A DNA stretch of 64,000 nucleotides, taken from the NCBI RefSeq assembly GCF_022045235.1, contig NW_027266275.1:16182001-16246000 (forward strand), read 5' to 3'. The notes below the pieces were generated by a model, which saw only the letters and a list, made by a program, of their open reading frames with translations, was not told where the DNA came from and did no database searches. This document shows positions 41,724 to 62,638 of the stretch, piece by piece. Source of the stretch: Haliotis cracherodii. Lineage: Eukaryota. The position numbers and the translations under genes are program-made. Each line of letters opens with the position of its first letter. Position 1 is the first letter of the stretch.

Positions 41724-42140
41724 CAATCAGCCAGTTCCAGACCAGGCCTTCAATCAGCCAGTTCCAGACCAGGCCTTCAATAAGCCAGTTCCAGACCAGG
41801 CCTTCAATAAGCCAGTTCCAGACCAGGCCTTCAATCAGCCAGTTCCAGACCAGGCCTTCAATCAGCCAGTTCCAGACCAGGCCTTCAATCAGCCAGTTCC
41901 AGACCAGGCCTTCAATAAGCCAGTTCCAGACCAGGCCTTCAATCAGCCAGTTCCAGACCAGGCCTTCAATAAGCCAGTTCCAGACCAGGCCTTCAATCAG
42001 CCAGTTCCAGACCAGGCCTTCAATAAGCCAGTTCCAGACCAGGCCTTCAATCAGCCAGTTCCAGACCAGGCTTTCAATCAGCCTGTTCCAGACCAGGCAT
42101 TCAATCAGCCAGTTCCAGACCAGGCATTCGATCAGCCAAC
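41724..42140. repeat. 27-bp minisatellite, ~15 copies
   Basis: (AAT(C/A)AGCCAGTTCCAGACCAGGCCTTC)n, downstream of the CCDC6 stop codon. Confidence 0.95.
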
Positions 42141-43268
42141 TGGCAGAGGAAAATTGTCCCCAATACATGGTATATCCATTTTCAGCAACCATTGTGGCCA
42201 ACCAATCTCCACTTTCATGACAAGTATGAGGGACACTTCAATAACAAGTACGGGGAAAAAGCTATCTGCCCTGGACTTCCCCAGGGACACTTAAAAATGA
42301 GGCACTTCTCTAAGATGATGTCTGAACGAACAACATAAATATATCTGTGTTTGTATGTACATGGTCTTCTTTGACTTCCTGTGCCCTGACAAGTCGCATG
42401 ACGAGGCACCACAGCAAATACATTACACCTGAAAACAATCAACAATGCCTGATATGTGATCTTCACACATAACACAGAGGAATCACCATAACAAATATAC
42501 ACAGCTTCACGTCACAGTGACAACATAGGAAACACGAAATCATTTCAGGTCTTATGCATTGGTGGATTTTCGAAGGCTGATAGAATGACAGAAAGGGATG
42601 ATAGGATTGTTCAAAATACAAAATACAAAATATGTACGCTTAACAAGATCTTCCCATACAGATATGGACTCCTGTATCCATTGAAATAAAGACTGAGAAC
42701 ACATAACCTATACTCCCACATCATTCTTTATCACAGAATAAGATGGTCATCGTGTACATGGTGTAGGAAAATAACACTGCACAAAAATAACAAGTTTGTT
42801 TCTCTCCACCGTGATCAAAGAAAAAAAATAACTCTTCTGAATCATAACATTACTTGAAAAGAAATAGGAACATACAACTGAAATCGAAATGCAAAAACAA
42901 TTTCTGTAAAGTTTCCTTAAATTTTTTTTTTTTTTAAAAACTGTTGATTTTCTGTTCCATCATTTTTTAATGTTTAAAAATAAAAACTGTATCTAAATTA
43001 TTTTCAACAACTGGGGATTGAAAAAAACATTCCGCTAAGCTTTGGTAACTTTGCACAAAGCCTTGATAGAGATCCACAGCAAGCCTCCAACTTCACAGTT
43101 GACAGCAATAACAAGAAAATCGGCAGCGGTCAGCCCTCCTCCATCACCGACCAACAACATTCAAGGCCATGTAGCACCTTGAGAACGCAAGACAACACTA
43201 TCAGTTGATTGGATAAGAGTTGGGCTTGTTCGATCGGTGGAATCGCTTGTTGACCGCCATGCTTACTA

Positions 43269-46200
43269 TCATGTCTTGTCGTTCTTCTCGCTCGGCAATG
43301 CGCTTGGTTTTGCAAATTTTTCTGGGCTGGGTCTGGGTTTCTGAAAGGGATGATGTAAAACGTCAGTACTGGAAGCTCATTCAGGTGGTGAGTGAAATGA
43401 GTGGAGTCGCAAAACGATTTAAAGACCGAGAACGGTGGAATTTGCTTCAAGTTGTTGCTAATAGTTTATCAAAATGTAAGTGACAGGCGGACATGATTTG
43501 GAACCTAGTGATAAGGGCGAGGGGACCATGATGGCTGGAATGACCTCTTTGTTTATACACAGTGGGAGCTTGCTTCTGGTTCATCATTTTGGATTCAAAC
43601 CTGGACCAGGCAAATCAGTGGACAAGAGTGTATGATATCTGATCATGAAGGTTATGATAGAGTTATCTCCCCTGTCCTACTGACAATCCAAGGACAGGTA
43701 TTCATTACTGTGACTATCTGAATCTAATGTACTGGAAACCATATCTGGTGGGGACCCAGTGAAGGTATTCTATGTCACGTGTGTCATGACATACCTACCT
43801 CATGGCATGACATGTTCACTGCTGGAAATAGTTGCCTGCCAACTAGTCAAATGCCAGTGACTTTTAAATTGGGCTAGTAACATTTCAGTCAAGCTGGCCC
43901 AAATGTCTATTTGAAAATTCTTGTCAAATACTTATTCATTTCTAGTATTTTCTACAAATCATCGAGTCAGCTGAGGCATCATTTATTGTCATTTTGTTTT
44001 CAATACGTAGTTTATTGGAAACTGGGTTATTTCTGGAAACTGATTGACTGATATGCATGTACATGTGCAAGTAGTTGTGGCTGTGAAAGTCGAAGAACCA
44101 CCACAAATGTATAATACCAAGCAACTTCTCAGCTTAGCTGTTGTTAAACATGATAATCTTAAGACTATTTTAATACATTTTGCAAATAGTGACCTCCATT
44201 AAGTAGGGCTAGTAAAATAAGATGACTTTTAACATTTACAGTTACAAACATGACATTCTCAACATGAGTTTGAATCGAAAACGCGATGCTTACGATGATG
44301 AATTCAAACTGCGAGTCTTCGCTCTAGCTGATATATTTTCTCACGGGTTCATAATTCTATATACACCGATTCACAAAATGGTGCTTCGTTGTTGATGGCA
44401 ACATATAACAATCATTATGAGATTAAAAAAACCCACGAGAAACAGCTTCCCACATTATGAAAGTGGATGACTGGTTTGTTAAATCTTTATTAGAAATAAT
44501 AATGACTTTTTCAATATAATTCCAACATTTTTCATCTTATATTTTTGAACATCTGCAAGTACCGGCACATGTCTTGCAGTCCGACTATGCAGTGTTTTTT
44601 TGCCTTTTCGGCTTATCTGCGGGTCATATCATTTTCTTTGGTATTTCAATGGTCAAGTTAACACCTCGGCTTATCTACGGGGTCGGCTTATCCGCGGTCA
44701 TATACGGTAACAAGCCGTCCTGGCCAGTGAACCTTGGATACTCATCCTACACTGGACATGCACAGCGATATCCGAGTAACAGATTCCCTAATTGAGAAAT
44801 CATGAGAATTTGTTCACTCTACACCCGGAATCAACAGATATGAATGATATCTCCAACTAAAAACATGCTGTATTTGATAAATAAACATATGCATAATGAC
44901 TTACAGCTCCATCAGTTTTACTTTTTAAAACTTGTTCAGAATGGACAATGAATTTACTGGCTCAGCATGACATCATCATAATGGTTTACACACAGGAGAT
45001 TTATACGGCTAAGTACTTCCCTGACGGACTAGGGCTGGGACGGGTAACTCGGGTACCCACAGGACTACCCAGACCCGTGGTAAGTTAAGTGATATATTGT
45101 TTAATGGCAAAAACTCACTATAGCTCAGTGGTTTCACTACAAGTCACTAATGTTTGCATTTCTTTCTGACGATGCACTGATTCCTTTTGACTTGTAAATG
45201 TTTGAGTAATGATAAAGCTTCAGTCAACTTCAGTGAACGCATGTATCTAAATAGTTTTAGCCAGAGCTGCAGTCAAACAAATACCGGTCAGACATTTTGT
45301 TCCAAACTCTTGAGACCTACAGTGGGTACCCAGGTAGGGTCAGGTAATAGGGGGTCGGGTACCCGGGTAGTAAATTTGGACTCGTCCCAGCCCTATTGCA
45401 TACAGTGTTTAAGAAGATTCAATCTTCCTTCTGCCCAGCTGACAAAGGGTATTTGTGTAATGGGTTAACTTAGGCATATTCTAATAATATCATCCAATCA
45501 GATTCAATATCCAATTTAATTTCATGATAGGCCTAAGCTAGCAAGAGCACTTAGGCTACACTATTGTTAGTGAAGCAAGAGAACATGATTGTAAACCATT
45601 ACGGCAAAGTCATGGAAAAAAACCAGCAATTAATCTATTTCTATTCTATTTTATGAGTGTGGATATTGACTTTGTTTTAAATTGAGGATCATTTGTGCAA
45701 AACTTGAAAATAAATCCTGTATTGGAAAAAGTAACAATAGATGCTTAAGTATATATACTACTCAAAAGAAGTTAAGGATCACCAGACCTTTCCTATTATT
45801 ATAGTTATTCTGTCATGCCATGACACCCCTATTTACTACTGGGATTGCAATGTGTTTAGCTGTATTGCTGATAGTCTAGATGTTATAAGATGAATGATAA
45901 GACTGGGTTGTCAAGCATCCTTTTACCACTTCCGACCAAATGATAATTCAAATATTCACATTTTCTACAGAATTGTTGGTATATGACTTTTCATATATAC
46001 TACTCAAAAGAAGTTAAATCTGTCATGGCATGACAGATTAACTATAGTCATATGAAAGGATCAAATGGTGTTACTTCTTTTGAGTAGAATATAACTGTCA
46101 GTATTGTCTTGTTCTGTATAAATATATATATATATATCTTATAACATGCGGTTTCTGCTCTAGACTAACGAAAATATTACAGTGTTGCACCGTAACTGCA

Positions 46201-48344
46201 GAATAACTGAATCTCATTTTATGTACATGATCCATATCAATTAAGATGCTACCAAGAGTCATTAGCAGATGACATCCCACCCCTCATGGAATTTGGCTAC
46301 TTTTCCCCATATTTGGTTCAGTGCCCTTTGATACCATCAGGTAAGTGAAGAAAAAATTAATGCTGTTCAGTATATTTCAAAATCCCAAATGAAACGTCAC
46401 CAGTTCACCACTAGACTGATCTTTATAGCAAGTTTCAATTAGAAATATTTATTTTGGAGTTCTGCACCAGAAACAACTTGTTTTCATCATGAAAAATCAT
46501 GACAAAAAAAAAGAAAGAAGAGAATAAATATCCCAAATCATCAAAAAGCACCAGTTCCTAACTAGACTGATCTATATAGACAGTTTCAAAAAGAAATATT
46601 AACAGTTTTGGAGTTCTGCTCCAGAAATGGAAAACAGACGGCTGATGGATGGACGGACGGATGGACATGCTGATCATTCAAAGCATGGAAAACATGGATT
46701 CCTATATTATCATGATTATGAAATATAAAACATAATAATTTAAAAACAGAAACATCTATTGTGTATTAACGTTTCTTAGACCCTACATGCTAAATGTTAA
46801 TGTGTGGAGAGTATTTTGGTAGCTTTCCATGTAAGACTGTATAATTACAAAAGAGAGCAGCAAAGCTGCACGTTGAACCAGCTAACATTTGCAAACAAAA
46901 CACAAACAGCCAACAAGACAGATGCATGCTGCAGTACCAAATAATGCAACGATGGAGCTGATGATGTTGCACAGAAACTCACATGGATGTTAGGGTTTAC
47001 CACAGGCATGCTGCTGAACACTGGTGGCGACGTGCCAGGGAGGAACGCTGGTGGGGCTGTCACCGTTGCTGCTGCCACCGACCCCGTGTGTGGGGCTGAC
47101 TGATGACCAGGGGTGTGGCCAGGTGGGTGCGAGGGAGGGTGGAAAGGCTGACCCGGCAAACTGCGTCTCATCGGACTCGGGGGACTTTTAGCTACGAACG
47201 TCAAACCTGGCAGCAGAACAACACAATGTGTGACGATGGGTGAATGAGTGAGCACACCGAGAAATACTGAGAGGAGAAGGAGGAGGAGGAGACTGTGGAG
47301 GAGAGAAAATGAAACGGAGGAAGAGAGGAAGGACATGAGAAGGTGGGACGGAGAGAAGGTAGGGAAGGGGAGGTTACAAGGTCGAGAAGGGACGGTAGAG
47401 GAGAGGAGAAGGTTGAGGAGGAGAGTAAAGGAGGAATGGAGGAAGAGAATGTGAGAAGTAGAAGGGAAGGAGAAGGTGGAGGCAAGAAGCAGGAGAGGAG
47501 AGGGATGAGGTGGAAAAGTGCAGAGAGGACAGGGATGACAAGGTGGAGAAGGTAGAGGAGAAGGTAGAGGAGAGAAGGTTGAGGAGGAGAGTAAAGCAGG
47601 AATGGAGGAAGAGAATGTGGACAGGATGAGAAGGTGGAGGGGAGATGGTTAGAGAAGGTTGAGGAGAGCAGAAGCGAAGGAGAAAATGGAGAAGGATGAG
47701 AAGGTGGAAGAGAGAAGAGGTGGAGGAGAGGAGGAGAGATGTGGAGAGGATGAGAAGGTGGAAGAGAGAAGAGGTGGAGGAGAAGAGGAGAGATGTGGAG
47801 AGGATGAGAAGATGGAGGGGAGATGGTGAGAGAAGGTTGAGGAGAGGATGAGAAGGCGGAGGAGAGGAGGAGGTAGAGGAGATGGTGGAGAGATGTGGAG
47901 AGGAGAAGGTGGAGAAATGCGGAGAGAAGGTGGAGGAGAGGAGAAGGTGGAGGAGATGGTGGAAAGGTGGTGGAGAGATGCGGAGAGAAGGTGGAGGAGA
48001 TGGTGGAGAGGTGGTGGAGAGATGTGGAGAGGAGAAGGTGGAGGAGAGGAGGTGAAGGAGTGAATCATGCTTGATTATCTATCCTTTTCTGTGCACAGGT
48101 CCACAAACTGTCTGTGCCATTTTTATTTAAGTGTTAGTAGTCACAATTGTAAATGAATTTAGAGATTTTTGTTGGGGAGTGCAGCACCTTATCTGGTTAG
48201 GGTGAAAATATGAGCTATCTACTAAACTAGTCTCAGAGAGTTTCCTTTTAATCATTAAGGTGTCAGGCTTTATTCAATGAAGCAGTGGAACCAAGAATAA
48301 TTTATTTAGTCTATTTCCAGGCAGAGAGCGATATTCAGCAGTGC

Positions 48345-48420
<76 letters not shown>

Positions 48421-51400
48421 CCTGAATGTAATCAGACTAGTGGTTAATACCACAAGCAAACATCAATACCTGTCAGCAAGGGGCTCATTCCACAAAGTGA
48501 TCATACCACTGTTAAGTATGGCAGTTACGATCACCTCAGCACTAAGATCACTTTGGGAACAGGGTACAGGACACTAGATTGTGACACTCGATCCCCATTT
48601 CTGTTGGCTCCTATTACAAGCAGTGGGTACCCGCAGATTCCCCATTGTTTTATACAAAGTTTAGAATTTTTAACAACTGTTTTTGCACAGAATATCTACG
48701 GAAAAAGGTTGGATAATCAAGAACGATGGCTTCACATTACTTTCCAAATCACAATGAAACATGATGATAAAAGCCTGCCTGATGAGGAACATCTGCAACA
48801 CAGGCAAAGCAAGGCAAAGGCTGTAGGATGCTGCACATGGATTATGAATTAAGTGTGCTCTTGGTGCCTGGATCACATAGATAGATCAGAAGTGATTGTG
48901 GACATGAAATGCAAACTAGATCATGAAGCACATCCAGCCAGGCAAACATAGCAAACAACAGCCCCCTTCTGAAACATTCGCAAACACTATAATGGACCAC
49001 TAATGTGAGGTGAAGTGTAATTGAGTTTTATTACCCACGTGGAGAAGATACAGGTTGTAAGATACTAAATCCGTACGTCACACGTGTGTCGTACAAGGTT
49101 GACCTTGTTTTATTCGTTTTGATTGGATAACCGTGACCTCTGTCACACCGGGACTACTTTTTTCATTCATAAAAAATCGCGAGACGTCATTCATTTTGCG
49201 ATTACAAGGCAGAACTGAAGAAATTCATGAGAACGAGAGATATTTACAAACACTTTATTAAACCAAACAAGATAGTCACACGCATCAAATTCGGTTTGCA
49301 TTCTATATAAGTTATGCATAGAGCTCCTACAGACATATAATAGACGTTACAGATCATTTCCCTCATATAGAGACACCAAGACATTCCAAGGCTGGCACCA
49401 AGCCCCAGTCTTTGTTTTGATCTCTAAATGTTAAGTGCCAGACTGGGAAACAACAAGTATTATGTAGAAACATCTTTAGGTACAAGGCCAAAGGATCGAA
49501 CCACTGACCTTCCTCTCTCTTGGAAGACGCTCTAGGACAACTAATGTGTGTTCGACTGACTGGCTGTGAAGAGTCAACAAACTTGTAATTCTGATGTATA
49601 CAAACCAACATTCATCTACCTGTGGTGACAAGAAGAGTTGGGGACACTGAAACTAATGCCTACCAGGTGACAGTGGTCTGGCTGTGGTATTGGAAACAGA
49701 CTATTGTGCGCTAAGAGCATGCTAAGATATCTCCTAGGTGATAGTGGTCTGGCTGTGGTATTGGAAACAGACTATTGTGCACTGATCTGACCATACAAAG
49801 ATACCTACCAGATGACAATGGTCTGGTTGTAGTGATAAGAAGAGTTTTGAAGACTTTAACAGATCAGGCTAAGATACCTACCGAGAGAGTGGTATCGGTG
49901 TGGTGTATGAAACATACACAAGTGTGCACTGATCTGAACTCACTAAGATACCACCCAGGTGACAGTCATATGGCTGTAGTGTTGGAAACAGACTATTGGG
50001 CACTGATCTGAGCTCACTAAGAAACCTGTCTACCAGATGACAATGGTCTGGCTGTGGTATTGGAGGAGGCATAGGGTATTGTGCATCAATATGAACTTGC
50101 TAAGATACCTACCAGGTGACAGTGGTCTGGCTGTGGTATTGGAGGAGGCATAGGGTATTGTGCATCAATATGAACTTGCTAAGATACCTACCAGGTGACA
50201 GTGGTCTGGCTGTGGTATTGGAGGAGGCATAGGGTATTGTGCATCAATATGATTTTGCTAAGATACCTACCAGGTGACAGTGGTCTGGCTGTGGTATTGG
50301 AGGAGGCATAGGGTATTGTGCATCAATATGAACTTGCTAAGATACCTACCAGGTGACAGTGGTCTGGCTGTGGTATTGGAGGAGGCAAAAGGTATTGTGC
50401 ATCAATATGATTTTGCTAAGATACCTACCAGGTGACAGTGGTCTGGCTGTGGTATTGGAGGAGGCATAGGGTATTGTGCATCAATATGATTTTGCTAAGA
50501 TACCTACCAGGTGACAGTGCTCTGGCTGTGGTATTGGAGGAGGCATAGGGTATTGTGCATCAATGTGAACTTGCTAAGATACCTACCAGGTGACAGTGGT
50601 CTGGCTGTGGTATTGGAGGAGGCATAGGGTATTGTGCATCAATATGAACTTGCTAAGATACCTACCAGGTGACAGTGGTCTGGCTGTGGTATTGGAGGAG
50701 GCATAGGGTATTGGACTAGAAACTGTACGGGGACGGACTGTGTGACCAGACATATCATGCTGTTTGCTCATCTCGTTAAAGTGCCTGGAAACATGAAATA
50801 ATTCAATATCATGTGGTGGAAAAATATCATCTCTGCAAGATGGTCCTTCCTTCAGACATTTGACCAAAACAATGTAAATTACTTGACTCAGGTAGGCTGG
50901 AAGCAAAAGAATACTGTTAGAAACTAGTCAAGTCAACAAGCGAATTGGCCATGTTTTGAGACAATGACACAATGAACACCATTTGTAAAGTCTCAGAAAG
51001 TGAGTGAATGTTTTCTTCAGTCACATCAGCAATATTTTAGTTATATCATGGCAACTTGTAAATATTCATCTATGGGGCAGGTTTGTAGACTACATTACCA
51101 AATATCCTTGCCACTGACACACGATCAGTCAGGTCAGTAATTGTGACCCCCAAATGCTCATGGGAGGACTCTTACAAACAGCATTAACTAATGGGGACCT
51201 ATTCTGCCCTGGAATTCAGACATGGCTGCTAAAGTGACATCATGAGTGCCAATAGTAATATGCCATGAAAAAGCTATGTGAGAAACTTGAGCAATATTAC
51301 ACTAGTGATGCCATCTGCAGCCAGTTCTTTACTTCTGTGGCTGAACCTGATCTTACCTCTCATCATCCATCTCAAGACTGGATTCGCTCTCTGACAGATG

Positions 51401-54400
51401 GCGGCAGAGACTCTCCCTCCTCTCCATCTCCAGCTGAAGACGGCGCTGCAGTCGCAGGTTCTCCTCCCGGATGTGCCGCTCCTCCTGGGCGTATTGTGCC
51501 ATCTTCTCCTCATCTGGAACACACAGCATCTCAGTATCACAAGGAGAAACATGACACTTCAGTATCACAAGGAGAGACACAGCGCCTCAGTATCACAAGG
51601 AGAGACACAGCACTTCAGTATCACAAGGAGAGACACAGTGCCTCAGTATCACAAGGAGAGACACAACGCCTCAGTATCACAAGGAGAGACACAGTGCCTC
51701 AGTATCACAAGGAGAGACACAGCGCCTCAGTATCACAAGGAGAGACACAGCACTTCAGTATCACAAGGAGAGACACAGCACTTCAGTATCACAAGGAGAG
51801 ACACAGCGCCTCAGTATCACAAGGAGAGACACCATCATACTGTTACAAGGAGAGACACAGCACTTCAGTATCACAAGGAGAGACACAGCGCCTCAGTATC
51901 ACAAGGAGAGACACCATCATACTGTTACAAGGAGAGACACAGCGCCTCAGTATCACAAGGAGAGACACCATCATACTGTTACAAGGAGAGACACAGCATC
52001 TCAGTATCACAAGGAGAGACACCATCATACTGTTACAAGGAGAGACACAGCGCCTCAGTATCACAAGGAGAGACACCATCATACTGTTACAAGGAGAGAC
52101 ACAGCGCCTCAGTATCACAAGGAGAGACACCATCATACTGTTACAAGGAGAGACACAGCGCCTCAGTATCACAAGGAGAGACACCATCATACTGTTACAA
52201 GGAGAGACACAGCGCCTCAGTATCACAAGGAGAGACACCATCATACTGTTACAAGGAGAGACACAGCGTCTCAGTATCACAAGGAGAGACACCATCATAC
52301 TGTTACAAGGAGAGACACAGCGCCTCAGTATCACAAGGAGAGACACCATCATACTGTTACAAGGAGAGACACAGCGCCTCAGTATCACAAGGAGAGACAC
52401 CATCATACTGTTACAAGGAGAGACACAGCGCCTCAGTATCACAAGGAGAGACACCATCATACTGTTACAAGGAGAGACACAGCACTTCAGTATCACAAGG
52501 AGAGACACAGCGCCTCAGTATCACAAGGAGAGACACCATCATACTGTTACAAGGAGAGACACAGCGCCTCAGTATCACAAGGAGAGACACCATCATACTG
52601 TTACAAGGAGAGACACAGCGCCTCAGTATCACAAGGAGAGACACCATCATACTGTTACAAGGAGAGACACAGCGCCTCAGTATCACAAGGAGAGACACCA
52701 TCATACTGTTACAAGGAGAGACACAGCGCCTCAGTATCACAAGGAGAGACACCATCATACTGTTACAAGGAGAGACACTGCGCCTCAGTATCACAAGGAG
52801 AGACACCATCATACTGTTACAAGGAGAGACACAGCGCCTCAGTATCACAAGGAGAGACACCATCATACTGTTACAAGGAGAGACACAGCGTCTCAGTATC
52901 ACAAGGAGAGACACCATCATACTGTTACAAGGAGAGACACAGCGCCTCAGTATCACAAGGAGAGACACCATCATACTGTTACAAGGAGAGACACTGCGCC
53001 TCAGTATCACAAGGAGAGACACCATCATACTGTTACAAGGAGAGACACACATGCACAAATCAGAGCTTAGGTAATCCCAAGGTCATCAGAAGGTAATACT
53101 AGCACTAGAATAGTCGGCCTTCAAAATTTTATCACTTCAATGCCCTACAACAAGGATGCGATGTACCAAATGTCATCCTACAACAGTAAACCAGGAAACA
53201 CTTCTTGAGTTAATGTAAACACCAATCCTGGTACATTTTTTAAGTGTACAATCTTGAGAGTGAATTTGAGCTCCATTATCAGTGGCAAGTACTTCAAGAA
53301 CATTCCAACGGACTTTCCAGCCTATATTCCACATATGATGTCCCTTGGTGGAATCCAATGTAACAATGAAAACATAGCATACGCCCTACAGCATTATCAG
53401 TGAAAGTAGATCACTGACATACCATCATTTGTCATAGATAGTTATTCAAATAAAAGAACTACATTCATATGATCTAAAACATATCTGAAGAAAAAGGCAT
53501 TTTAGTGAAAATGGCAAACATACTTTACAAATAGCCTTCTCTATGACTTTGACCTCATATATAGGTCACACAAAAACCATCTCGGCCCCACCCAAAGGAA
53601 GAGTGAGTGAGTTGGATTTTACGCCGCTTTTAACAGTATTCCAGTTATATCGCGGTGTGTCAGCTTAATGTGGTAGGAAAGCTCGAAGTGATGCAGGTCT
53701 CAGATGTTTACCACCGAGAAACCCACGAGCACGGGTATGGTGCTGACAAACCTAGAAACATAATCGGGGCGAACCGGGATTCGAACCCACAATCCTAGGT
53801 TTCTGGCATGCCCAAGGGACGCAACTCTGCACAGCGAATCGCAGCGCCTTAGACAACTGGGCCACCCGTGCCCCCACCCCCCAAAGGAAGATATATACCA
53901 AGATTCCTTGACCATTGTTGACCAACAGTAGTTCCTTCGTGAATTTAACAAACCTTTTTTTCAAGCTGAATTAAATCTTGACTTGACATTTCAACGTGAT
54001 ACAAAAATGTCAAGAGTTATAAAGACAAAAATGATATGATATCCTTGACATGTCCAAGCAGTGGACAAGCATTTACATGGTGTTGCATAAAAAGCTGCCA
54101 TCAAATTTCGTGGTTTGGTCAGCTGCTGTAAATGTATGTTCTGACAAGGAAGATCTGTCTGTCCCTGTGTGTACTCACGTTCTGACAAGGAGGATCTGTC
54201 TGTCCCTGTGTGTACTCACGTTCTGACAGGGAGGATCTGTCTGTCCCTGTATGTCCACGTGTGTACTCACGTTCTGACAAGGAGGATCTGTCTGTGTGTA
54301 CTCACGTTCTGACAAGGAGGATCTGTCTGTCCCTGTGTGGACTCACGTTCTGACAAGGAGGATCTGTCTGTCCACGTGTGTACTCATGTTCTGACAAGGA

Positions 54401-57400
54401 GGATCTGTCTGTCCCTGTCTGTCCACGTGTGTACTCACGTTCTGACAAGGAGGATCTGTCTGTGTGTACTCACGTTCTGACAAGGAGGATCTGTCTGTTC
54501 CTGTGTGTACTCACGTTCTGACAAGGAGGATCTGTCTGTCCCTGTGTGTACTCAGGTTCTGACAAGGAGGATCTGTTTGTCCCTGTGTGTACTCACGTTC
54601 TGACAAGGAGGATCTGTTTGTCCCTGTGTGTACTCACGTTCTGACAAGGAGGATTTGTCTGTCCCTGTGTGTACTCATGTTCTGACAAGGAGGATCTGTT
54701 TGTCCCTGTGTGTACTCACGTTCTGACAAGGAGGATCTGTCTGTCCCCGTGTGTACTCACGTTCTGACAAGGAGGATTTGTCTGTCCCTGTGTGTACTCA
54801 TGTTCTGACAAGGAGGATCTGTCTGTCCCTGTGTGTACTCACGTTCTGACAAGGAGGATCTGTCTGTCCCTGTGTGTACTCACGTTCTGACAAGGAGGAT
54901 CTGTCTGTCCCTGTGTGTACTCACGTTCTGACAAGGAGGATCTGTCTGTCCCTGTATGTACTCACGTTCTGACAAGGAGGATCTGTCTGTCCCTGTGTGT
55001 ACTCACGTTCTGACAAGGAGGATCTGTCTGTCCCTGTGTGTACTCATGTTCTGACAAGGAGGATCTGTCTGTGTGTACTCATGTTCTGACAAGGAGGATC
55101 TGTCTGTGTGTACTCATGTTCTGACAAGGAGGATCTGTCTGTGTGTACTCATGTTCTGACAAGGAGGATTTGTCTGTCCCTGTATGTACTCATGTTCTGA
55201 CAAGGAGGATCTGTCTGTATGTACTCATGTTCTGACAAGGAGGATTTGTCTGTCCCTGTATGTACTCACGTTCTGACAAGGAGGATCTGTTTGTCCCTGT
55301 GTGTACTCATGTTCTGACAAGGAGGATCTGTCTGTCCCTGTATGTACTCACGTTCTGACAAGGAGGATCTGTCTGTCCCTGTATGTACTCACGTTCTGAC
55401 AAGGAGGATCTGTCTGTCCCTGTGTGTACTCATATTCTGACAAGGAGGATCTGTCTGTCCCTGTGTGTACTCATGTTCTGACAAGGAGGATCTGTTTGTC
55501 CCTGTGTGTACTCATGTTCTGACAAGGAGGATTTGTCTGTCCCTGTGTGTACTCATGTTCTGACAAGGAGGATTTGTCTGTCCCTGTGTGTACTCATGTT
55601 CTGACAAGGAGGATCTGTTTGTCCCTGTGTGTACTCATGTTCTGACAAGGAGGATCTGTCTGTGTGTACTCATGTTCTGACAAGGAGGATTTGTCTGTCC
55701 CTGTGTGTACTCATGTTCTGACAAGGAGGATCTGTCTGTCCCTGTGTGTACTCATGTTCTGACAAGGAGGATTTGTCTGTCCCTGTGTGTACTCACGTTC
55801 TGACAAGGAGGATCTGTCTGTCCCTGTATGTACTCATGTTCTGACAAGGAGGATCTGTCTGTGTGTACTCACATTCTGACAAGGAGGATCTGTCTGTCCC
55901 CATGTGTACTCACGTTCTGACAAGGAGGATCTGTCTGTCCCTGTGTGTACTCACGTTTTGACAAGGAGGATTTGTCTGTCCCTGTGTGTACTCACGTTCT
56001 GACAAGGAGGATCTGTCTGTCCCTGTATGTACTCATGTTCTGACAAGGAGGATCTGTCTGTGTGTACTCATGTTCTGACAAGGAGGATCTGTCTGTCCCT
56101 GTGTGTACTCACGTTCTGACAAGGCCTGTCTGAGCTGGTTCTTTAATCTGTTGGTCTCCCCGCGGAGATTCTCAATGTGCTGCATCAGGTTATGTGCTGT
56201 GTCACCGTTGTTCATATCACGTGGCGACGGTGGCGCCGATACGGGCTGGTCCAACTTCTCCTGCAGTAACCTGCATCACATACACAATGCTGCTTATTCC
56301 TTTAAACTTATGAAAACTTCATGACATGAAATATTTCTTATTCATTTTCTGAACAGTCACTTCATATTTATAACGGTACAATACACATACTATGATATTC
56401 TGAACATCATGATAATCAAACAGATATCTTTTCTAAAATTGTTCATTTAAATCTTACATCAACACTGTAGTAAATGTACTTATAAAACTGATGAAAAAGG
56501 TTCACAAAAGACCTTAAACTGATAATGGTAAGACAGGACACAACCAAAAGTTAGCCAAGTAAACACAAGACACAAAAATAAACCAATAGTGGTCACACAG
56601 GACACATCTTTATCTTAACCAAGTTAATACAACTGGAAGTTAGCCATGTTAACACAGGACGCAACAGTAAACCTACAATGGCCACACATGACACAAGTAC
56701 AAGTTAGCCATGTTAACACAAGACACAATACTAAACCTACAATGGCCACACAGGACACAATTACAAGTTAGCCAAGTTAACACAAGACACAACAGTAAAC
56801 TGATCATGGTCACACAAGTCACAACTAACCGCTTCTCGGCCTCCAGTTTATCCATCTTCTTCCACAGCCGATTGACCAATGACTCCTGTTCCTGCTCAAG
56901 GGCATTCTCCAACTCCACCTTCTCCCGGCGCAACTACAACAGGGAGAAATCATAATGATACAAGGCACAATATCATACATATGGTCTGTTTGGACACTGT
57001 GTCTGGACAACACCTTGAGCTACTGACCTGTTCTAGTGTCTGCTGTCTGGACACACCTTGAGCTACTGACCTGTTCTAGTGTTTGCTGTCTGGACACACC
57101 TTGGACTACTGACCTGTTCTAGTGTTTGCTGTCTGGGCACACCTTGGACTACTGACCTGTTCTAGTGTCTGCTGTCTGGACACACCTTGAGCTACTGACC
57201 TGTTCTAGTGTTTGCTGTCTGGACACACCTTGAGCTACTGACCTGTTCTAGTGTTTGCTGTCTGGACTACACCTTGAGCTACTGACCTGTTCTAGTGTTT
57301 GCTGTCTGGACTACACCTTGAGCTACTGACCTGTTCTAGTGTTTGCTGTCTTGACATCACATTGAGCCTCATACTGACCTGTTCTCGTGTCTGCTGTCTG

Positions 57401-60400
57401 GACAACACCTTGAGCTACTGACCTGTTCTTGTGTTTGCTGTCTGGACAACACCTTGAGCTACTGACCTGTTCTAGTGTTTGCTGTCTGGACTACACCTTG
57501 AGCTACTGACCTGTTCTATTGTTTGCTGTCTGGACTACACCTTGAGCTACTGACCTGTTCTAGTGTTTGCTGTCTGGACTACACCTTGAGCTACTGACCT
57601 GTTCTAGTGTTTGCTGTCTGGACTACACCTTGAGCTACTGACCTGTTCTAGTGTTTGCTGTCTGGACTACACCTTGAGCTACTGACCTGTTCTAGTGTTT
57701 GCTGTCTGGACTACACCTTGAGCTACTGACCTGTTCTAGTGTTTGCTGTCTGGACTACACCTTGAGCTACTGACCTGTTCTAGTGTTTGCTGTCTGGACA
57801 CACCTTGAGCTACTGACCTGTTCTTGTGTCTGCTGTTTGGACAACACCTTGGGCTACTGACCTGTTCTCATGTCTGCTGTCTTGACATCACCTTGAGCCT
57901 CATACTGACCTGTTCTAGTGTTTGCTGTCTGGACAACACCTTGAGCTACTGACCTGTTCTAGTGTCTGCTGTTTGGACACTGTGTCTGCCTCCAGTTTCT
58001 CTATCTTCCTCATCAGCTTGTTGATCTGGTATTCCTGTTCCTTCTCCAATGTCTGTTCCAACTCTATCTTCTCCTGCCTCAACTGCAACAACAACAACAA
58101 CAACAACTAACTACACCGACAGCAGATGTTAAAACAAGGGGCAAGTCCCTGTCACTGACTGGTAGCATCTCTTAGAGGTCAATACCAACAGCTTTGTACA
58201 CGTCAGTACTTTCTAGAAACCCTTATTTGCTGGTTGTTGGTTGGTTGGTTGGTTGGTTGTTTTACACCGCACTCAGCAATATTCCAGTTATATGACAGCG
58301 GTCTGTAAATAATCGAGTATGGACCAGACAATCCAGTGATTAAAATCATGAACATCGATCCACGCAATTAGGATCTATGACATGCATCAACCAAGTCAGC
58401 GGGCCTGACCACCCGATCCCGTTTAGTCGCCTTTTACGACAAGCATAGTCACCTTTTACAGCAAGCATGGGTTGCTGAGACCTATTCTACTCCGGAATCT
58501 TCACGGGTTATTTGCTTGTATAATCTGAGAAAACTGTATGACAACATCCAACATATATGGAGGTATTGTCCTCAGTACATTTATTAGTAGTGGGACAATA
58601 CATCGATGCATTTGGGTGATCATAATTTTTCACTTCTCGGTAGAAGTATCTATCATAATTGCACACTAAGTTAAAAGTATTGATTCTTACCTTAAATGTA
58701 TTCTTTAATAAATGTTATATCAAACACTAATTTTTTGTGAAAATGAGTAGTGAAATCGTAAATAGTTTTATCCATTGTGCCATACTTGACACTGCCAACT
58801 GTAAATCGTTAATGGCCAGGTTTTGGGCGATCTATGAAAAAGATTGCTTACATTGCAATCTTAGTGCTAAGACGATCCTAACTCCCAAACTCAAGGTCAA
58901 AGGTCATGGCACCAAGATCGCTTTGAAGAACAGGGCCTCGTTCCACAAAGCGATCTTAGTGCTAAGACGATCCTAACTCCCAAACTCCAAGAATGACAAA
59001 GGTCATGGCACCAAGATCGCTTTGAAGAACAGGGCCTCGTTCCACAAAGCGATCTTAGTGCTAAGTTGGTCGTAACTCCCCTACTTAACATAGGCTTACA
59101 ATCAAATAGCACTAAGATCGCATTGTGGAACGGGGCCCAGGCCCTGGAATCTGACAATCCAGTGGAGTCAGGGACATGCAATCAACCAAGTCAACAACCA
59201 CGACTGCCTTATCTATACAGTTGCCTCCCAACACAGGCAAGCACAGGTTAACTTCTCTAAGAGGCATTTAGAAGTTGGAGTGCTAAGTAAGGATGTACGT
59301 GGATGAACATCACTTGATTGACAATGGTCTTAGAACTTACATTGATACGTTGCTCCTAATTGTAATATAGAAGTTGTTCATCCATATATCTTATACTTAC
59401 TAATAACAGGTTACTTGGCAGCAGTCCTACCCTGTGATAGAAACTAACTGTTTCAGTCCACTGGTCCTTATAATGATAACAAATAGCAAAACCCTTAAAA
59501 GGGGCTATTTTCTTCTAGTCTTAATGATACCGTAACTATTGGGCAGTTTGGCAAGGACTACAGGACTAGTGCCAATTTCTAACGCTGGGGTAGTGGCAGA
59601 TGACAGGCCCAAACTGTTCAGATAGGACTTACAACAAATAAGTCACTTGACTTATTACAAAATATCGAAGCAAGTCACGGCTGGTTTTTTTCATGAGTCA
59701 GTGACTGTTCATCATGTTCATGAACAAGAATGATGAATGACCACAGACTTGTTCATGAAGTATTTCTGCTGGGTGGTGCTTTGCGGCGTCACACAACACA
59801 CGAACACTGACTTATTCATGTTATCTATACAGATTGTGTGAGGTAGAACAGGACCTGGTAGAACAGGACACGACATACCCTATACACAAACATCGGTCAT
59901 CATCACTGATTTTCAGTGATCCATTCACATCATTTTCACCCCTAATTTAGTATTTTATTTTTTATGCCCACTGGAATCCACTTTGGTGGATAATCACTAC
60001 TAGTTGTTCTTTAGCTTTGACATGTCATATTTAGGTCATATTCACTTCAAAGTCTTGACAAAAGTTTGCTTGCTTGTTTCCAGTTTCATAATCAATTCAA
60101 CCGTTATGGACAAAACGATAACAAATAAATACAAATGATAATCATTACCTGATTAAATATAATGCATTTCCAGGATAAATCCCACAGCAATTATCCTGTT
60201 GTCTTGTTGCAAACAATACATAAACAATATCAGTTTCATGTGATCATAAATAATTCACTAGTTTCAGTCTGTATTCCCCTATTGTTAGTGTAGGGTGTCA
60301 GACCAGGTACTGTGCACGTGTGGTTTTACTCTCGTCATGAGTGACATCCCTCTGGGTTGTTTTAATCATACACTCAGACACAATAAGTAGAAGATCAGGG

Positions 60401-62638
60401 CACCACTGGGACAATGATCTCTTTCAATACTCTCAGGCGTTACCATTTTAGAATTAATTTACAAATTTAACGTTGAAGAGCAAGAACTATGAGACCAGTT
60501 CAGCGAAAATGGCAATGTGTAAGGATAGGGCTTTATATTTTTTGTAATTTTACAAAAAAACAGGATCTTTAAAAAACAAAGCAATTTAAACAAAGAAATA
60601 ACACTTTTTGTCGATACAAAAACAGTGATGACTTTCTACTTTATTCCATTTGTTTTGCAAACTTAAAAAAAGTTCTTACTTGAAAGTTAAACACACTCTC
60701 AAGTCGAACTGAGCAGTATTTCAGACAGTTTACTGTCATTCCCATGACTCTTGGTGCCAGGCAATGCAAGAACTATGGTCAGCCCCTTCTATAGTGAAAT
60801 GTATTTCTAAACACATGGCTGTAGAAATTGGACAGCACCATAACTGGTTACCATAGTTACATCTGGATCAGATATATATTTAAATGCGAGTTTTCATTTC
60901 TGAATTAAATTGGAGGTTTTGTTATTAACACCATATTAACATTAGCATGAAATGTACATAATTCCCCTGCTATATGTGCATACAGAGACAACGCGTGACA
61001 AACAACGCAAACTCTGTCTCCCCAGTGTATAAATCGCCAAGAGTAGATAGAAATGTCACTTTTTCTAAATTCCATCAAGAAATCCTAATAAAACACAATA
61101 TCATTTTAGGAGAGCATTTTTTTAGATATTCTCTATTTAAGTTTTACATTTTATATCAAAACATTTCCAGGACATATATTGCCTATGTCATAGGTGAAAG
61201 GTATATCAACATTTAACAACTATTACAACTATTACATTACTGAATTTCTGATCTATGATGATGGTAAATATTTTTTCAAATCAAAATTAGAATTGGCCAT
61301 TATTTTTATGCTAACTTAAAATGGTTAATTCAAATCAATGAAACAAATGTGAGATGTGAATTCCTTGATATTTGTCTAAAAAGCATAATTTTGAAAGTAT
61401 TTTATTTAACATTATTGACAACAACCAATGACGACGGATGTCTTCTATTGAGCAGCAACAGACCATCACTGTGAGAAGTGTCCTTGACCTTCAGGATATA
61501 GCTGAGCATAGTGTTTCCTCAGCAGCATGTCTTAGACTTGACCTTTGTAACTTGACTTTGACATAAAGGTCAAGGTGAAGTGCTATTGCATACCAGTATG
61601 TGATGTCTAGCCCTAAACCATAGCAGTAAACACAGACAATTTTCACTGATAAATCTGACAGGGGAGATTAAGAGAAACAGATTATATTTTCCCCTAAGCA
61701 TGCTCAGTATAACAGAATCAGAAATCACTGCCTACATCATTATCAGCCTGAAGATATAACATGCCTCCAATTTGGCAGAGTTCCTATATTTCAATGCCCT
61801 TGATGTTGAAAATCAAATTCATGCTTACCCTATGTTTACTTTATTTGAATAAAGGCCACTTAACATGCTGACATGTTATATTGCCTCGGAACCTATATCC
61901 TCATGTCATGCGGTCCCTCCAGTGTGTCATGTTGTCAGTCTTATCGGTTAGGTAATCACTCTCTAATGTCATGCATGAGTTTCCTGGAGAGATTGTTAGT
62001 GGGGTACTCCCCATCTACCCAGGCCCACCTGCATGAGTTTCCAGGAGAGATCGTTAGTGAGGTACTCCCCATCTATCCAGGCCCACCTGCATGAGTTTCC
62101 GGGACAGATCGTTAGTGAGGTACTCCCCTCTACCTGCACCCCTATAGACCCACATGCATGAGTTTCCGGGACAGATCGTTAGTGAGGTACTCCCTTCTAC
62201 CTGCACCCTAAGAGACCCACCTGCATGAGTTTCCGGGACAGATCGTTAGTGAGGTACTCCCCTCTACCTGCACCTCTAGAGACCCACATGCATGAGTTTC
62301 CGGGTCAGATCGTTAGTGAGGTACTCCCTTCTACCTGCACCCTAAGAGACCCACCTGCATGAGTTTCCGGGACAGATCGTTAGTGAGGTACTCCCCTCTA
62401 CCTGCACCCTAAGAGATCCACCTGCATGAGTTTCCTGGACAGATCGCTAGTGAGGTACTCCCCTCTACCTGCACCCCTAGAGACCCACCTGCATGAGTTT
62501 CCGGGACAGATCGTTAGTGAGGTATTCCTCCTCCTGCTCGTAGTTCATCGCCAGGGTCTCCTTCTCCTTCTTCAGAGACTGGATCTTCTTCAGCAGAGTG
62601 TTGCTGATAAACTCCTCCTCTTGTTCAGCTTTGGCTTG
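43269..62638 (-). CDS. CCDC6: Coiled-coil domain-containing protein 6, exons 2-9 (62489-62638, 57954-58082, 56830-56933, 56113-56270, 51357-51513, 50666-50784, 46983-47206, 43269-43340); exon 1 outside the window
   Basis: Exons translate to [118 protein letters not shown] and SPEKFAKP*. All are GT-AG and phase-consistent. The last acceptor has a TACTGAC branch site. The last two exons are less certain. Confidence 0.93.
45030..45395. mobile_element. hAT-like MITE
   Basis: TAGGGCTGGGACG ... CGTCCCAGCCCTA terminal inverted repeats with subterminal GGGTACCC motifs. No TSD recognisable. Confidence 0.7.
47268..48060. repeat. ~800-bp GA-rich low-complexity tract (pyrimidine-rich on the transcribed strand)
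   Basis: Degenerate GGAGA/GAAGG repeats just upstream of the CCDC6 exon-8 acceptor (47207-47208). Confidence 0.9.
49655..50713 (-). repeat. 79-bp tandem array of the CCDC6 exon-7 3' end plus its donor
   Basis: Unit starts at 50101, 50180, 50259, 50338, 50417, 50496, 50575 and 50654, with degenerate copies toward 49655. Each contains ...CTGTCACCTG|GTAGGTAT. Confidence 0.95.
51519..53048 (-). repeat. 28-bp / 54-bp (28+26) higher-order minisatellite abutting the CCDC6 exon-6 acceptor
   Basis: ACACAGCGCCTCAGTATCACAAGGAGAG alternating with ACACCATCATACTGTTACAAGGAGAG. Confidence 0.95.
54135..56124 (-). repeat. 41-bp (and 35-bp variant) tandem array of the CCDC6 exon-5 3' end plus its donor, ~50 copies
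   Basis: Minus-strand unit contains CCTTGTCAGAAC|GTGAGTAC, identical to the real junction at 56113/56112. Confidence 0.95.
56986..57980 (-). repeat. 43-44-bp tandem array of the CCDC6 exon-3 3' end plus its donor, ~22 copies
   Basis: Minus-strand unit contains CAGCA(A/G)ACACTAGAACAG|GTCAGTAG, matching the real junction at 57954/57953. Confidence 0.95.
59033..59137. mobile_element. PIF/Harbinger-like MITE with its 5' part tandemly duplicated (~58850-59030); related copy at ~48480-48563
   Basis: TIR GGCCTCGTTCCACAAAGCGATCTTAGTGCTA / TAGCACTAAGATCGCATTGTGGAACGGGGCC, flanked by CAG on both sides (3-bp TSD). Confidence 0.65.
61971..62525 (-). repeat. 67-bp tandem array of the CCDC6 exon-2 3' end plus its donor, ~8 extra copies
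   Basis: Period of 67 (62087, 62154, 62221, 62288, 62355, 62422, 62489) with two distal 58-bp diverged copies. Each contains TACCTCACTAACGATCTGTCCCGGAAACTCATGCAG|GTGGGT or a variant. Confidence 0.95.

What the first reader, a model, noticed from the sequence alone, without database searches (positions are those of the whole stretch)
49655..62525. Splice-junction-seeded tandem arrays: four CCDC6 donor sites independently amplified into minisatellites
Seen: four unrelated minisatellites (67, 44, 41 and 79 bp units) each consist of the last 12-48 nt of a CCDC6 coding exon (2, 3, 5, 7), the GT donor, and the first ~20-31 intron nt. The real junction is always the terminal copy, and the arrays extend only into the intron. 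Together they give about 90 extra junction copies, many with the GT intact. No unit is a multiple of 3, and read-through hits a stop within one to two units in each case. A fifth array sits on a branch-point/acceptor region. Inference: four of seven visible donors being hit suggests a process targeted to splice junctions. Candidates are co-transcriptional pausing or R-loop/U1-linked slippage, RNA-templated repair, or selection tolerating duplications only on the intron side. The arrays may act as decoy 5' splice sites or U1 sponges, tune NMD-coupled expression, or be raw material for intron gain.
Basis: partly seen in the sequence, partly recalled or inferred. Interest (0 to 1): 0.88.

Follow-up and report, generated by a model that had tools for sequence, protein, structure and literature searches.

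The report
Splice-junction "mirage" minisatellites in abalone CCDC6
Four introns of the black-abalone CCDC6 gene begin with head-to-tail copies of their own exon end plus splice donor; this repeat type is already known from lancelets ("mirages") and human F7, it is unusually dense here, and the cell still splices from the first, genuine copy.

Summary
The window is Haliotis cracherodii contig C12, and CCDC6 exons 2-9 lie on the minus strand.

**Arrays**
- Introns 2, 3, 5 and 7 each start with an array (units of 67, 44, 41 and 79 bp). Each unit is exon end + GT donor + intron start.
- There are 93 junction copies, counting the 4 genuine ones. 64 pseudo-donors keep GT, and 44 match the real donor over -9..+9.
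- Two more arrays only abut splice sites. A 64-bp array starts at intron base +3 of exon 4. A 54-bp array ends 7 nt before the exon 6 acceptor. Neither contains exon sequence.

**Splicing**
- RNA contigs of two abalone species join exon 7 from its first donor and skip the whole 79-bp array.
- The RefSeq protein of this assembly holds every exon translation contiguously, so the model uses the first donor everywhere.

**What it is**
- This is a known kind: amphioxus "mirage" minisatellites and the human F7 IVS7 VNTR.
- This scan had already noted it about 30 times on other DNA of this genome.

**Junction targeting**
- It is only partly supported. The clustering in this gene is non-random (P about 3e-4 under a generous null).
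- My small unbiased sample gives modest donor-side enrichment.
- A genome-wide donor-motif test shows no clear excess.
- No evidence supports a decoy, U1-sponge or NMD role.

The parts
62489..62638 (-). CCDC6 exon 2 (150 nt), donor CAG|GTGGGT
   Evidence: PF09755 hit E 4.6e-26. Translation equals residues 75-124 of H. cracherodii RefSeq CCDC6-like P0271.
61970..62533 (-). 67-bp junction ('mirage') array: 8 junction copies including the genuine one, all with GT. Unit = last 36 nt of exon 2 + 31 nt of intron. The two distal copies form an older subfamily (79% identity to the genuine copy).
   Evidence: tblastn finds [13 protein letters not shown] 6-7 more times.
57954..58082 (-). CCDC6 exon 3 (129 nt), donor CAG|GTCAGT
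   Evidence: PF09755 hit. Equals residues 125-167 of P0271.
57000..57978 (-). 44-bp junction array: 22 junction copies, all with GT. Unit = about 27 nt of exon 3 + about 17 nt of intron. It fills about 93% of the 1020-nt intron 3, and the last pseudo-donor lies about 94 nt from the exon 4 acceptor.
56830..56933 (-). CCDC6 exon 4 (104 nt), donor GCG|GTTAGT
   Evidence: Equals residues 168-201 of P0271.
56548..56827 (-). Degenerate 64-bp array (about 4 copies) that starts at intron base +3 after exon 4. It abuts the donor and holds no exon sequence.
   Evidence: Alignment score 69 against shuffle mean 15; the exon part is not similar (P 0.97).
56113..56270 (-). CCDC6 exon 5 (158 nt), donor AAC|GTGAGT
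   Evidence: Equals residues 203-254 of P0271.
54138..56124 (-). 41-bp junction array: 49 junction copies (26 GT, 22 AT, 1 CT), with 35- and 51-nt unit variants. Unit = at least 12 nt of exon 5 + 29 nt of intron.
51521..53049 (-). 54-bp array (27-28-nt sub-units near the exon), about 28 copies, rich in pyrimidine tracts plus AG. It ends 7 nt upstream of the exon 6 acceptor. It abuts the acceptor and is not shown to contain the junction.
   Evidence: Word depth is raised in other samples and in the sister species.
51357..51513 (-). CCDC6 exon 6 (157 nt). Its donor GAG|GTAAGA has no array.
   Evidence: PF09755 hit. RNA contigs end or join exactly at 51513 and 51356. Equals residues 256-306 of P0271.
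50666..50784 (-). CCDC6 exon 7 (119 nt), donor CTG|GTAGGT
   Evidence: RNA joints 51356|50783 and 50664|47204 in two species. Equals residues 308-346 of P0271.
49659..50713 (-). 79-bp junction array: 14 junction copies (12 with GT). Unit = last 48 nt of exon 7 + 31 nt of intron. Copies 1-7 are 96-100% identical to the genuine junction. Copies 8-13 are 66-86% identical and also differ from each other, so they are an older decayed tier.
   Evidence: [16 protein letters not shown] recurs 8 times plus 2 partial copies. The RNA contigs skip it entirely.
46983..47206 (-). CCDC6 exon 8. Acceptor at 47207/47206, donor near 46982, no array at either end.
   Evidence: RNA joint. tblastn of P0271 residues 344-421 at 98.7%.
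43269..43343 (-). Coding part of CCDC6 exon 9 (approximate start). The 3'UTR runs on towards about 42158.
   Evidence: tblastn of P0209, P0164 and P0271. Length of the RNA contig.

Best explanation
These are 'mirage'-type splice-junction minisatellites in the single-copy CCDC6 gene of the black abalone.

Origin (inferred): at each site a short tandem duplication of 41-79 bp happened to span an exon-intron boundary. Replication slippage or flap mis-processing between short direct repeats is the likely way. Unequal exchange or slippage then expanded the duplicate.

Tolerance (shown or argued): the splicing machinery takes the exon-proximal donor, so every further copy is simply intron and the protein is unchanged. 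This is shown for exon 7 and annotated for all junctions. Any use of a later copy would add a frame-shifting, stop-containing insert.

Consequence: the arrays are therefore tolerated by-products, not devices. They make up 34% of the DNA of introns 2-8 (6.3 of 18.2 kb).

Recurrent or polar growth: two arrays show an old decayed distal tier and a young proximal tier nearly identical to the constrained exon copy. This points to repeated or polar growth from the exon side.

Clustering (cause not identified): four junction-spanning arrays and two junction-abutting arrays in one gene, with none in the other 41 kb of the window, points to a local or gene-level propensity. I think some bias toward junctions, especially donors, is more likely than not (about 0.65), but its cause is not identified.
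For: Anatomy.

Gene identity and exon ends:
- PF09755 hits.
- Exon translations are found exactly and contiguously in XP_071108293.1 (P0271) of H. cracherodii. Its contig length of 82,358,895 equals that of C12.
- The gene is single copy.

First-donor use:
- RNA contigs of organism A (2470 nt) and organism B (2706 nt) join 50664|47204 and 51356|50783.
- They have zero depth over the arrays.
- The RefSeq models of H. cracherodii, H. rufescens, H. rubra and H. asinina carry the same exon junctions.

Reality of the arrays:
- DNA contigs from another individual and from a sister species confirm the diverged distal copies and the array edges.
- They break where the unit starts (50684) and show raised word depth.
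- They also show a 145-nt copy-number difference in the sister species.

Two-tier age structure.

Known class and tolerance mechanism: PMC3087553, PMC3902484, PMC1557585.

The same type elsewhere in this genome, seen in my own blind sample: L038 (myosin, 79 bp x7, 19 nt of exon + donor) and L014 (kinase, 75 bp x9.5, 71 nt of exon + GTGA).

Non-random clustering here.
Against: - Direct RNA evidence covers only the exon 6 acceptor and the exon 7 donor. For exons 2, 3 and 5 the evidence is gene models. Contigs drop rare isoforms, so low-level pseudo-donor use is not excluded.
- Copy numbers in the homogeneous array cores are not verified by long reads.
- The founding mechanism is inferred, not shown.
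- A junction bias is only modestly supported outside this gene. The sample is small (30-50 exons, P 0.0007-0.04), and the genome-wide donor-motif test shows no clear excess.
Confidence: 0.75

Rival explanations
1. A mutational process coupled to transcription, splicing or exon chromatin preferentially seeds minisatellites at 5' splice sites, acting gene by gene. Candidates are polymerase pausing or R-loops at U1-bound donors, or Okazaki-flap errors at the edges of exon-positioned nucleosomes. The arrays would then be its footprint and not chance hits.
For: - Four of 7 donors hit strictly and a fifth abutted in one gene, P about 3e-4 under uniform birth.
- In the blind sample, 4 arrays start near donors and none near acceptors, against 0.4-1.3 expected.
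- An old tier plus a young tier at the same junction suggests repeated seeding.
- Many earlier notes report clusters in other genes of this genome (leads, not tested here).
Against: - There is no fixed offset. The donor lies 24-95% along the unit, and the exon part ranges from 12 to 71 nt.
- The triple AGGTAAGT count is only 1.2x the reversed control and equal per array on C1.
- Only 1 of about 30 blind donors has a strict junction array.
- One earlier agent found no preference (s1-834456).
- No molecular evidence is at hand.
Confidence: 0.35
2. Pure chance in an array-rich gene with short ancestral introns. Births are uniform along neutral DNA, and this gene is the tail of the distribution, picked out by the reader.
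For: - The ancestral (non-array) intron 3 is only about 70-95 nt and intron 4 about 280 nt, which makes junction-spanning births likely there.
- Uniform birth at the sampled density (36 arrays per 300 kb) already predicts about 0.5% of donors with such an array.
- The genome-wide motif test shows no clear excess.
- The window was selected post hoc.
Against: - Even with short introns allowed, P(>=4 of 7) = 3e-4, and the product for the four observed arrays is 3e-6.
- Two further arrays abut splice sites within 3-7 nt.
- There is donor-side excess in the blind sample.
Confidence: 0.2
3. The arrays are functional: decoy 5' splice sites or a U1 sponge that tune CCDC6 output through NMD-coupled mis-splicing, or that slow intron removal.
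For: - 64 pseudo-donors keep GT, and 44 are identical to the real donor over 18 nt.
- Every mis-use would give a premature stop.
- The 79-bp and 54-bp arrays are present in a sister species.
Against: - Only first-donor joints are seen, and the arrays are absent from RNA contigs of two species.
- In human F7 identical downstream sites stay silent (PMC1557585).
- Half of the 41-bp copies have lost GT with no visible consequence.
- Units differ in sequence, length and copy number, and the distal copies decay freely.
- Sharing with a species about 2% diverged needs no selection.
Confidence: 0.05
4. Assembly artefact: collapsed or over-expanded repeats created by the assembler.
For: Short-read contigs cannot span the homogeneous cores. 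Bins 50260-50585 have no contig, so copy numbers are unverified.
Against: - Copies differ by ordered substitutions, indels and sub-families.
- The distal diverged copies and both array edges are recovered in an independent individual and in a sister species, with raised word depth.
- The same repeat type is seen at unrelated loci.
Confidence: 0.02

Closest known systems
Amphioxus 'mirage' minisatellites (Adh3, troponin C, globin BflGb6/BflGb9, PGBD5)
   Same: - Tandem repeats whose unit spans an exon-intron boundary and so duplicates splice signals.
- Units of 10-160 bp.
- Normal mRNA is still made.
- Edge copies are excluded from homogenisation.
- The mechanism is called unclear (PMC3087553, PMC3902484).
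   Different: - Here the host is a mollusc (Haliotis).
- There are up to 49 copies per array, four strict arrays plus two abutting arrays in one gene, and all strict ones are on the donor side.
- The amphioxus cases have few copies and include acceptor-side arrays.
- Somatic instability, reported for Adh3, was not tested here.
Human F7 intron 7 37-bp VNTR
   Same: The first monomer contains the exon 7/IVS7 junction. Five to nine identical 5' splice sites follow, and only the most upstream one is used (PMC1557585). This is the best model for why the abalone arrays are harmless.
   Different: It is a single array of few copies in a vertebrate, and its splice-site choice was tested by mutagenesis. 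Here the choice is inferred from RNA contigs and gene models only.
Intron gain or growth by tandem duplication across AGGT proto-splice sites (Rogers' model, as cited in PMC3087553)
   Same: A tandem duplication that carries splice signals makes new intronic DNA. The arrays here add 6.3 kb to introns 2-8, and 93% of intron 3.
   Different: No new intron or exon is created here. The intron positions match the models of other Haliotis species, and the arrays only enlarge existing introns.
Ordinary polymorphic intronic minisatellites of abalone (such as the 27-bp array in TSSK1-like intron 3 of H. discus hannai, PMC6905558)
   Same: Long, homogeneous intronic arrays are common in abalone genes and persist across species. 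The orthologous 27-bp array is present in this genome at L008:2557-3032.
   Different: That array is not reported to contain, and is not seen here to contain, an exon end or a splice site.

Membership tests
'Mirage' (splice-junction) minisatellite | Head-to-tail tandem array of a short unit (tens of bp), several copies | tested here: met
   TRF gives 6.7-49 copies at 83-97% matches.
'Mirage' (splice-junction) minisatellite | The unit spans an exon-intron boundary: exon end (or start) + splice signal + adjoining intron | tested here: met
   Met for the 67-, 44-, 41- and 79-bp arrays. Not met for the 54-bp array (no similarity to the exon start, P 0.5-0.8) or the 64-bp array (no exon part). Those two only abut a splice site.
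'Mirage' (splice-junction) minisatellite | The genuine junction is the outermost copy, continuous with the exon | tested here: met
   Exon translations run into the first unit. This follows by geometry once the first donor is used.
'Mirage' (splice-junction) minisatellite | Normal splicing goes on and the duplicated sites stay unused | tested here: met
   Direct evidence for the exon 7 donor and the exon 6 acceptor comes from RNA contigs of two species. For exons 2, 3 and 5 the evidence is the RefSeq model of this assembly and of three congeners. Rare use is not excluded.
'Mirage' (splice-junction) minisatellite | Length instability or polymorphism | tested here: inconclusive
   The sister species shows a 145-nt repeat of two distal 79-bp units and different word depths. 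Short-read contigs cannot size the arrays, and no long reads were available.
CCDC6 (Pfam PF09755, DUF2046 / protein H4) | Significant match to the family profile above the curated cut-off | tested here: met
   Exons 2, 3 and 6 score 92.1, 53.7 and 82.5 bits against a cut-off of 24.7.
CCDC6 (Pfam PF09755, DUF2046 / protein H4) | Orthology to annotated CCDC6 of related species | tested here: met
   Exon translations are identical to H. cracherodii XP_071108293.1 and 96-100% identical to the H. rufescens and H. rubra models. The gene is single copy in the genome.

The most novel reading that the evidence does not exclude
In abalone, 5' splice sites are preferred birthplaces of minisatellites, through a germline process coupled to transcription, splicing or exon chromatin that acts gene by gene. 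CCDC6 would be a hot gene, with repeated seeding at the same junctions. That would make abalone a natural system for two questions: how introns grow from their own junctions, and how a spliceosome picks one donor among up to 49 identical ones.
Probability: 0.35. Interest if true: 0.7.

Novelty: new member of a known kind. Interest (0 to 1): 0.35.

Why it matters
The repeat type is known. Published cases are a handful of amphioxus genes and one human intron, and the mechanism is called unclear.

This locus is a very dense example. One conserved single-copy gene has four junction-built arrays and two junction-abutting arrays. There are 64 intact pseudo-donors, of which 44 match the real donor over 18 nt, and RNA from two species shows first-donor use.

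It offers natural test material for 5' splice-site choice. In intron 3 the last pseudo-donor sits about 94 nt from the next acceptor and is still ignored in the gene model. It also shows how junction duplications enlarge introns, here a third of the DNA of introns 2-8.

For annotation, such arrays are a trap. They produce pseudo-exon hits and dozens of perfect decoy donors.

Tried and rejected
I laid 47000-51860 instead. Pseudo-donor use at exons 2, 3 and 5 therefore could not be checked with reads.
- **Enrichment test.** The sample is 20 kinase exons and 30 myosin loci, 23 of which are one paralogue cluster.
- **Triple-donor-motif genome count**. The result was 2001 matches against 1647 for the reversed control, and 12 against 12 distinct arrays on C1. 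The test has little power and at most bounds strict donor arrays to a few percent of donors.
- **The 54-bp array as a copy of the exon 6 acceptor** was rejected.
- **The L020 38-bp array as a donor array** was rejected because no exon precedes it. The L014 20-bp acceptor-like array lies 390 nt from the next exon.
- **Short ORF fragments P0001-P0016** from the representatives search come from other invertebrates and show no repeated tails.
- **A tRNA-like SINE seen by eye in intron 5.** ARAGORN finds no tRNA.
- **A persistence advantage from the constrained exon copy** was considered as an alternative to a birth bias. I judged it weak, because unconstrained arrays also stay homogeneous through concerted evolution.

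Full report
**What is there.** Tandem Repeats Finder reports arrays of period 67 (62082-62533, extended to 61970 as a 201-bp period), 44 (57000-57978), 41 (54138-56124), 54 (51521-53049) and 79 bp (49659-50713). It also reports a degenerate 64-bp array at 56548-56824.

Reading the minus strand shows a CCDC6 gene:
- Exons 2, 3 and 6 hit Pfam PF09755 at 92, 54 and 83 bits.
- Each exon translation occurs exactly and contiguously in XP_071108293.1, 'coiled-coil domain-containing protein 6-like [Haliotis cracherodii]' (P0271).
- That protein sits on a contig of 82,358,895 bases, the length of contig C12 that holds this window. The genome is therefore the black abalone.

Exons in window coordinates, minus strand:

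| Exon | Coordinates |
|---|---|
| 2 | 62638-62489 |
| 3 | 58082-57954 |
| 4 | 56933-56830 |
| 5 | 56270-56113 |
| 6 | 51513-51357 |
| 7 | 50784-50666 |
| 8 | 47206 to about 46983 |
| 9 | from about 43343 |

Exon 1 lies outside the window. The gene is single copy.

Exon 2 was searched alone by reference, and full-length comparisons used database proteins. In one search a local script chained exon coordinates only to count stops per frame.

**The arrays.** Four arrays are built from the junction itself. The unit is the last 36, about 27, at least 12 and 48 nt of exons 2, 3, 5 and 7, then the GT donor, then 31, about 17, 29 and 31 nt of intron.
- Counting the genuine junction there are 8, 22, 49 and 14 copies, total 93. 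GT is intact in 8, 22, 26 and 12.
- That leaves 89 extra copies and 64 pseudo-donors with GT. Of these, 44 are identical to the real donor over -9..+9.
- In the 41-bp array, 22 copies carry the same CG>CA change (GT>AT) in runs. This looks like one mutation spread by array turnover, not many independent hits.
- None of the four unit lengths is a multiple of 3, and read-through meets a stop 9-80 nt into the intron.

Two further arrays only touch splice sites:
- The 64-bp array starts at base +3 of intron 4 (score 69 against a shuffle mean of 15) but has no exon part.
- The 54-bp array ends 7 nt before the exon 6 acceptor and supplies the pyrimidine/branch region. It is not similar to the exon start (P 0.5-0.8).

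Together the six arrays make 6260 of the 18206 nt of introns 2-8, and about 93% of intron 3.

The second covered 47000-51860.
- RNA contigs of organism A (this species by label) and organism B (a congener about 2% diverged in the exons) both join 51356|50783 and 50664|47204. Both end exon 6 exactly at 51513. So the first donor of exon 7 is used and the whole 79-bp array is skipped.
- Depth over the arrays in both RNA runs is zero.
- DNA contigs of another individual and of organism B recover the diverged distal 79-bp copies and both array edges. They break at 50684, where the repeated unit begins. They show raised word depth on the 79-bp array and on the part of the 54-bp array that was laid (51521-51860). 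Organism B also has a 145-nt repeat of two distal units.
- The arrays therefore exist, are older than or recurrent across the two species, and vary in copy number. Exact copy numbers in the homogeneous cores remain unverified.
- The RefSeq models of H. cracherodii, H. rufescens, H. rubra and H. asinina all carry the canonical exon joins. This is indirect evidence for first-donor use at exons 2, 3 and 5.

**Age structure.**
- In the 79-bp array, copies 1-7 are 96-100% identical to the genuine junction. Copies 8-13 are 66-86% identical and only 63-77% identical to their neighbours (Spearman rho -0.72, p 0.005).
- In the 67-bp array, the last two copies form a separate sub-family (79% to the genuine copy, 94% to each other).
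- The 44-bp array is homogeneous throughout.
- This fits an old, decaying array overlaid by a young burst next to the constrained exon copy. That means polar or repeated growth from the exon side.

**What it is.** Tandem repeats that span an exon-intron boundary were named 'mirages' in amphioxus Adh3. They are reported for troponin C, globin and PGBD5. Splicing stays normal and the mechanism is called unclear (PMC3087553, PMC3902484). Human F7 intron 7 has a 37-bp VNTR whose first unit holds the junction. Its five to nine identical donors are functional, but only the most upstream one is used (PMC1557585). All defining features are met by the four donor arrays.

This scan has already noted the same thing about 30 times on other DNA of this genome. 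Those notes gave me the name and the species, and I checked both myself.

**Is there a junction-targeted process?** 'Arrays extend only into the intron' follows from geometry. Selection can only remove junction-spanning duplications, so any excess must come from mutation or persistence.

Within this gene:
- I assumed uniform birth along the ancestral (non-array) introns and allowed for very short ancestral introns 3 and 4.
- The expected number of donor-spanning arrays is then 0.54, and P(>=4 of 7) is 3e-4. This figure is post hoc.

For a sample of exons chosen blind to arrays I took 20 Pkinase exons with 10 kb each, and 30 Myosin_head loci with 3.4 kb each.
- There are 36 arrays in 300 kb.
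- At the targeted exons, arrays start at -19 (L038, a strict junction array: 19 nt of exon + donor, 79 bp x7), +8 (L015), +16 (L001) and about +90 nt (L018) from the donor. None starts near an acceptor.
- The expectation is 0.4-1.3, giving P between 0.0007 and 0.04 depending on how the myosin paralogue cluster and the choice of side are counted.
- A further strict array (L014, 75 bp x9.5 = 71 nt of exon + GTGA) turned up at an untargeted exon. It shows that units can be multiples of 3.

Against a strong genome-wide bias:
- Three AGGTAAGT motifs spaced 15-45 nt occur 2001 times against 1647 for the reversed motif. On contig C1 both give 12 distinct arrays. The test is weak. It limits strict donor arrays to a few percent of donors.
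- Across the six strict arrays the donor lies 24-95% along the unit. Nothing points to a break at the junction itself.
- Array density is very uneven. No array of period >=20 with >=3 copies lies in the first 41.7 kb of the window, and eight lie in CCDC6.

My reading is that a local or gene-level propensity is clear, some donor-side bias is likely (about 0.65), and its cause is unknown.

**Function.** Nothing supports decoys, a U1 sponge or NMD tuning.
- Only first-donor joints are seen.
- Half of one array has lost GT, while three arrays keep nearly all their GTs.
- Distal copies decay freely.
- The F7 work shows that identical downstream sites can stay silent without any special device.
- Low-level use cannot be excluded with contigs.

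**Limits.**
- Read laying and the look-up of sequencing runs allow one call each, and both are used.
- The N run at 9175-9346 was left alone.

Noticed in passing
G000 contig C74 (C74:4486-5433 and C74:24214-24885): A full-length Kinesin motor match contains 18 TAA and 2 TAG. A Pkinase match contains 8 TAA and 2 TAG. Neither has any TGA. This pattern fits a ciliate-type genetic code, so C74 is probably a non-abalone (ciliate?) contig in the assembly.
   Followed up: no
window 49032-49343 (intron 7): DNA contigs of another individual and of the sister species, and one RNA-run contig, skip a 312-bp high-copy element (word depth in the tens of thousands). It looks like a recent or polymorphic transposable-element insertion in the reference haplotype.
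   Followed up: partly
window about 58235-58510 (intron 2): An element of about 270 bp has thousands of candidate copies genome-wide at 90-95% identity (6880 candidates). It is an abundant young SINE/MITE-like repeat.
   Followed up: no
window 43204-43341 (exon 9): H. rufescens isoform X2 (P0164) joins exon 7 directly to exon 9 and reads it in another frame, which gives a different 46-residue tail. This is annotated exon 8 skipping.
   Followed up: partly
L008:2557-3032: This 27-bp x17.5 array matches the consensus of the polymorphic 27-bp minisatellite described in intron 3 of H. discus hannai TSSK1-like (PMC6905558). An intronic minisatellite is thus kept at an orthologous place across abalone species.
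   Followed up: partly
L014:2025-2733 and L038:1707-2273: Two more strict junction arrays lie in unrelated genes. In a cGMP-kinase-like gene the unit is 75 bp (71 nt of exon + GTGA), a multiple of 3 with a TGA at the donor. In a myosin gene the unit is 79 bp, and its intron part ends in a (GAGT)n run that matches TGAGTG in the exon, which suggests microhomology at the founding duplication.
   Followed up: partly
window 41724-42138: A 27-bp x15 array lies just beyond the point where the CCDC6 RNA contig ends (about 42158). It is probably in or after the 3'UTR and is not at a splice site.
   Followed up: no
window 47545-48052 (intron 7): A purine-rich (pyrimidine-rich on the gene strand) compound low-complexity array lies about 340 nt upstream of the exon 8 acceptor. 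The sister species lacks 461 nt of it.
   Followed up: no
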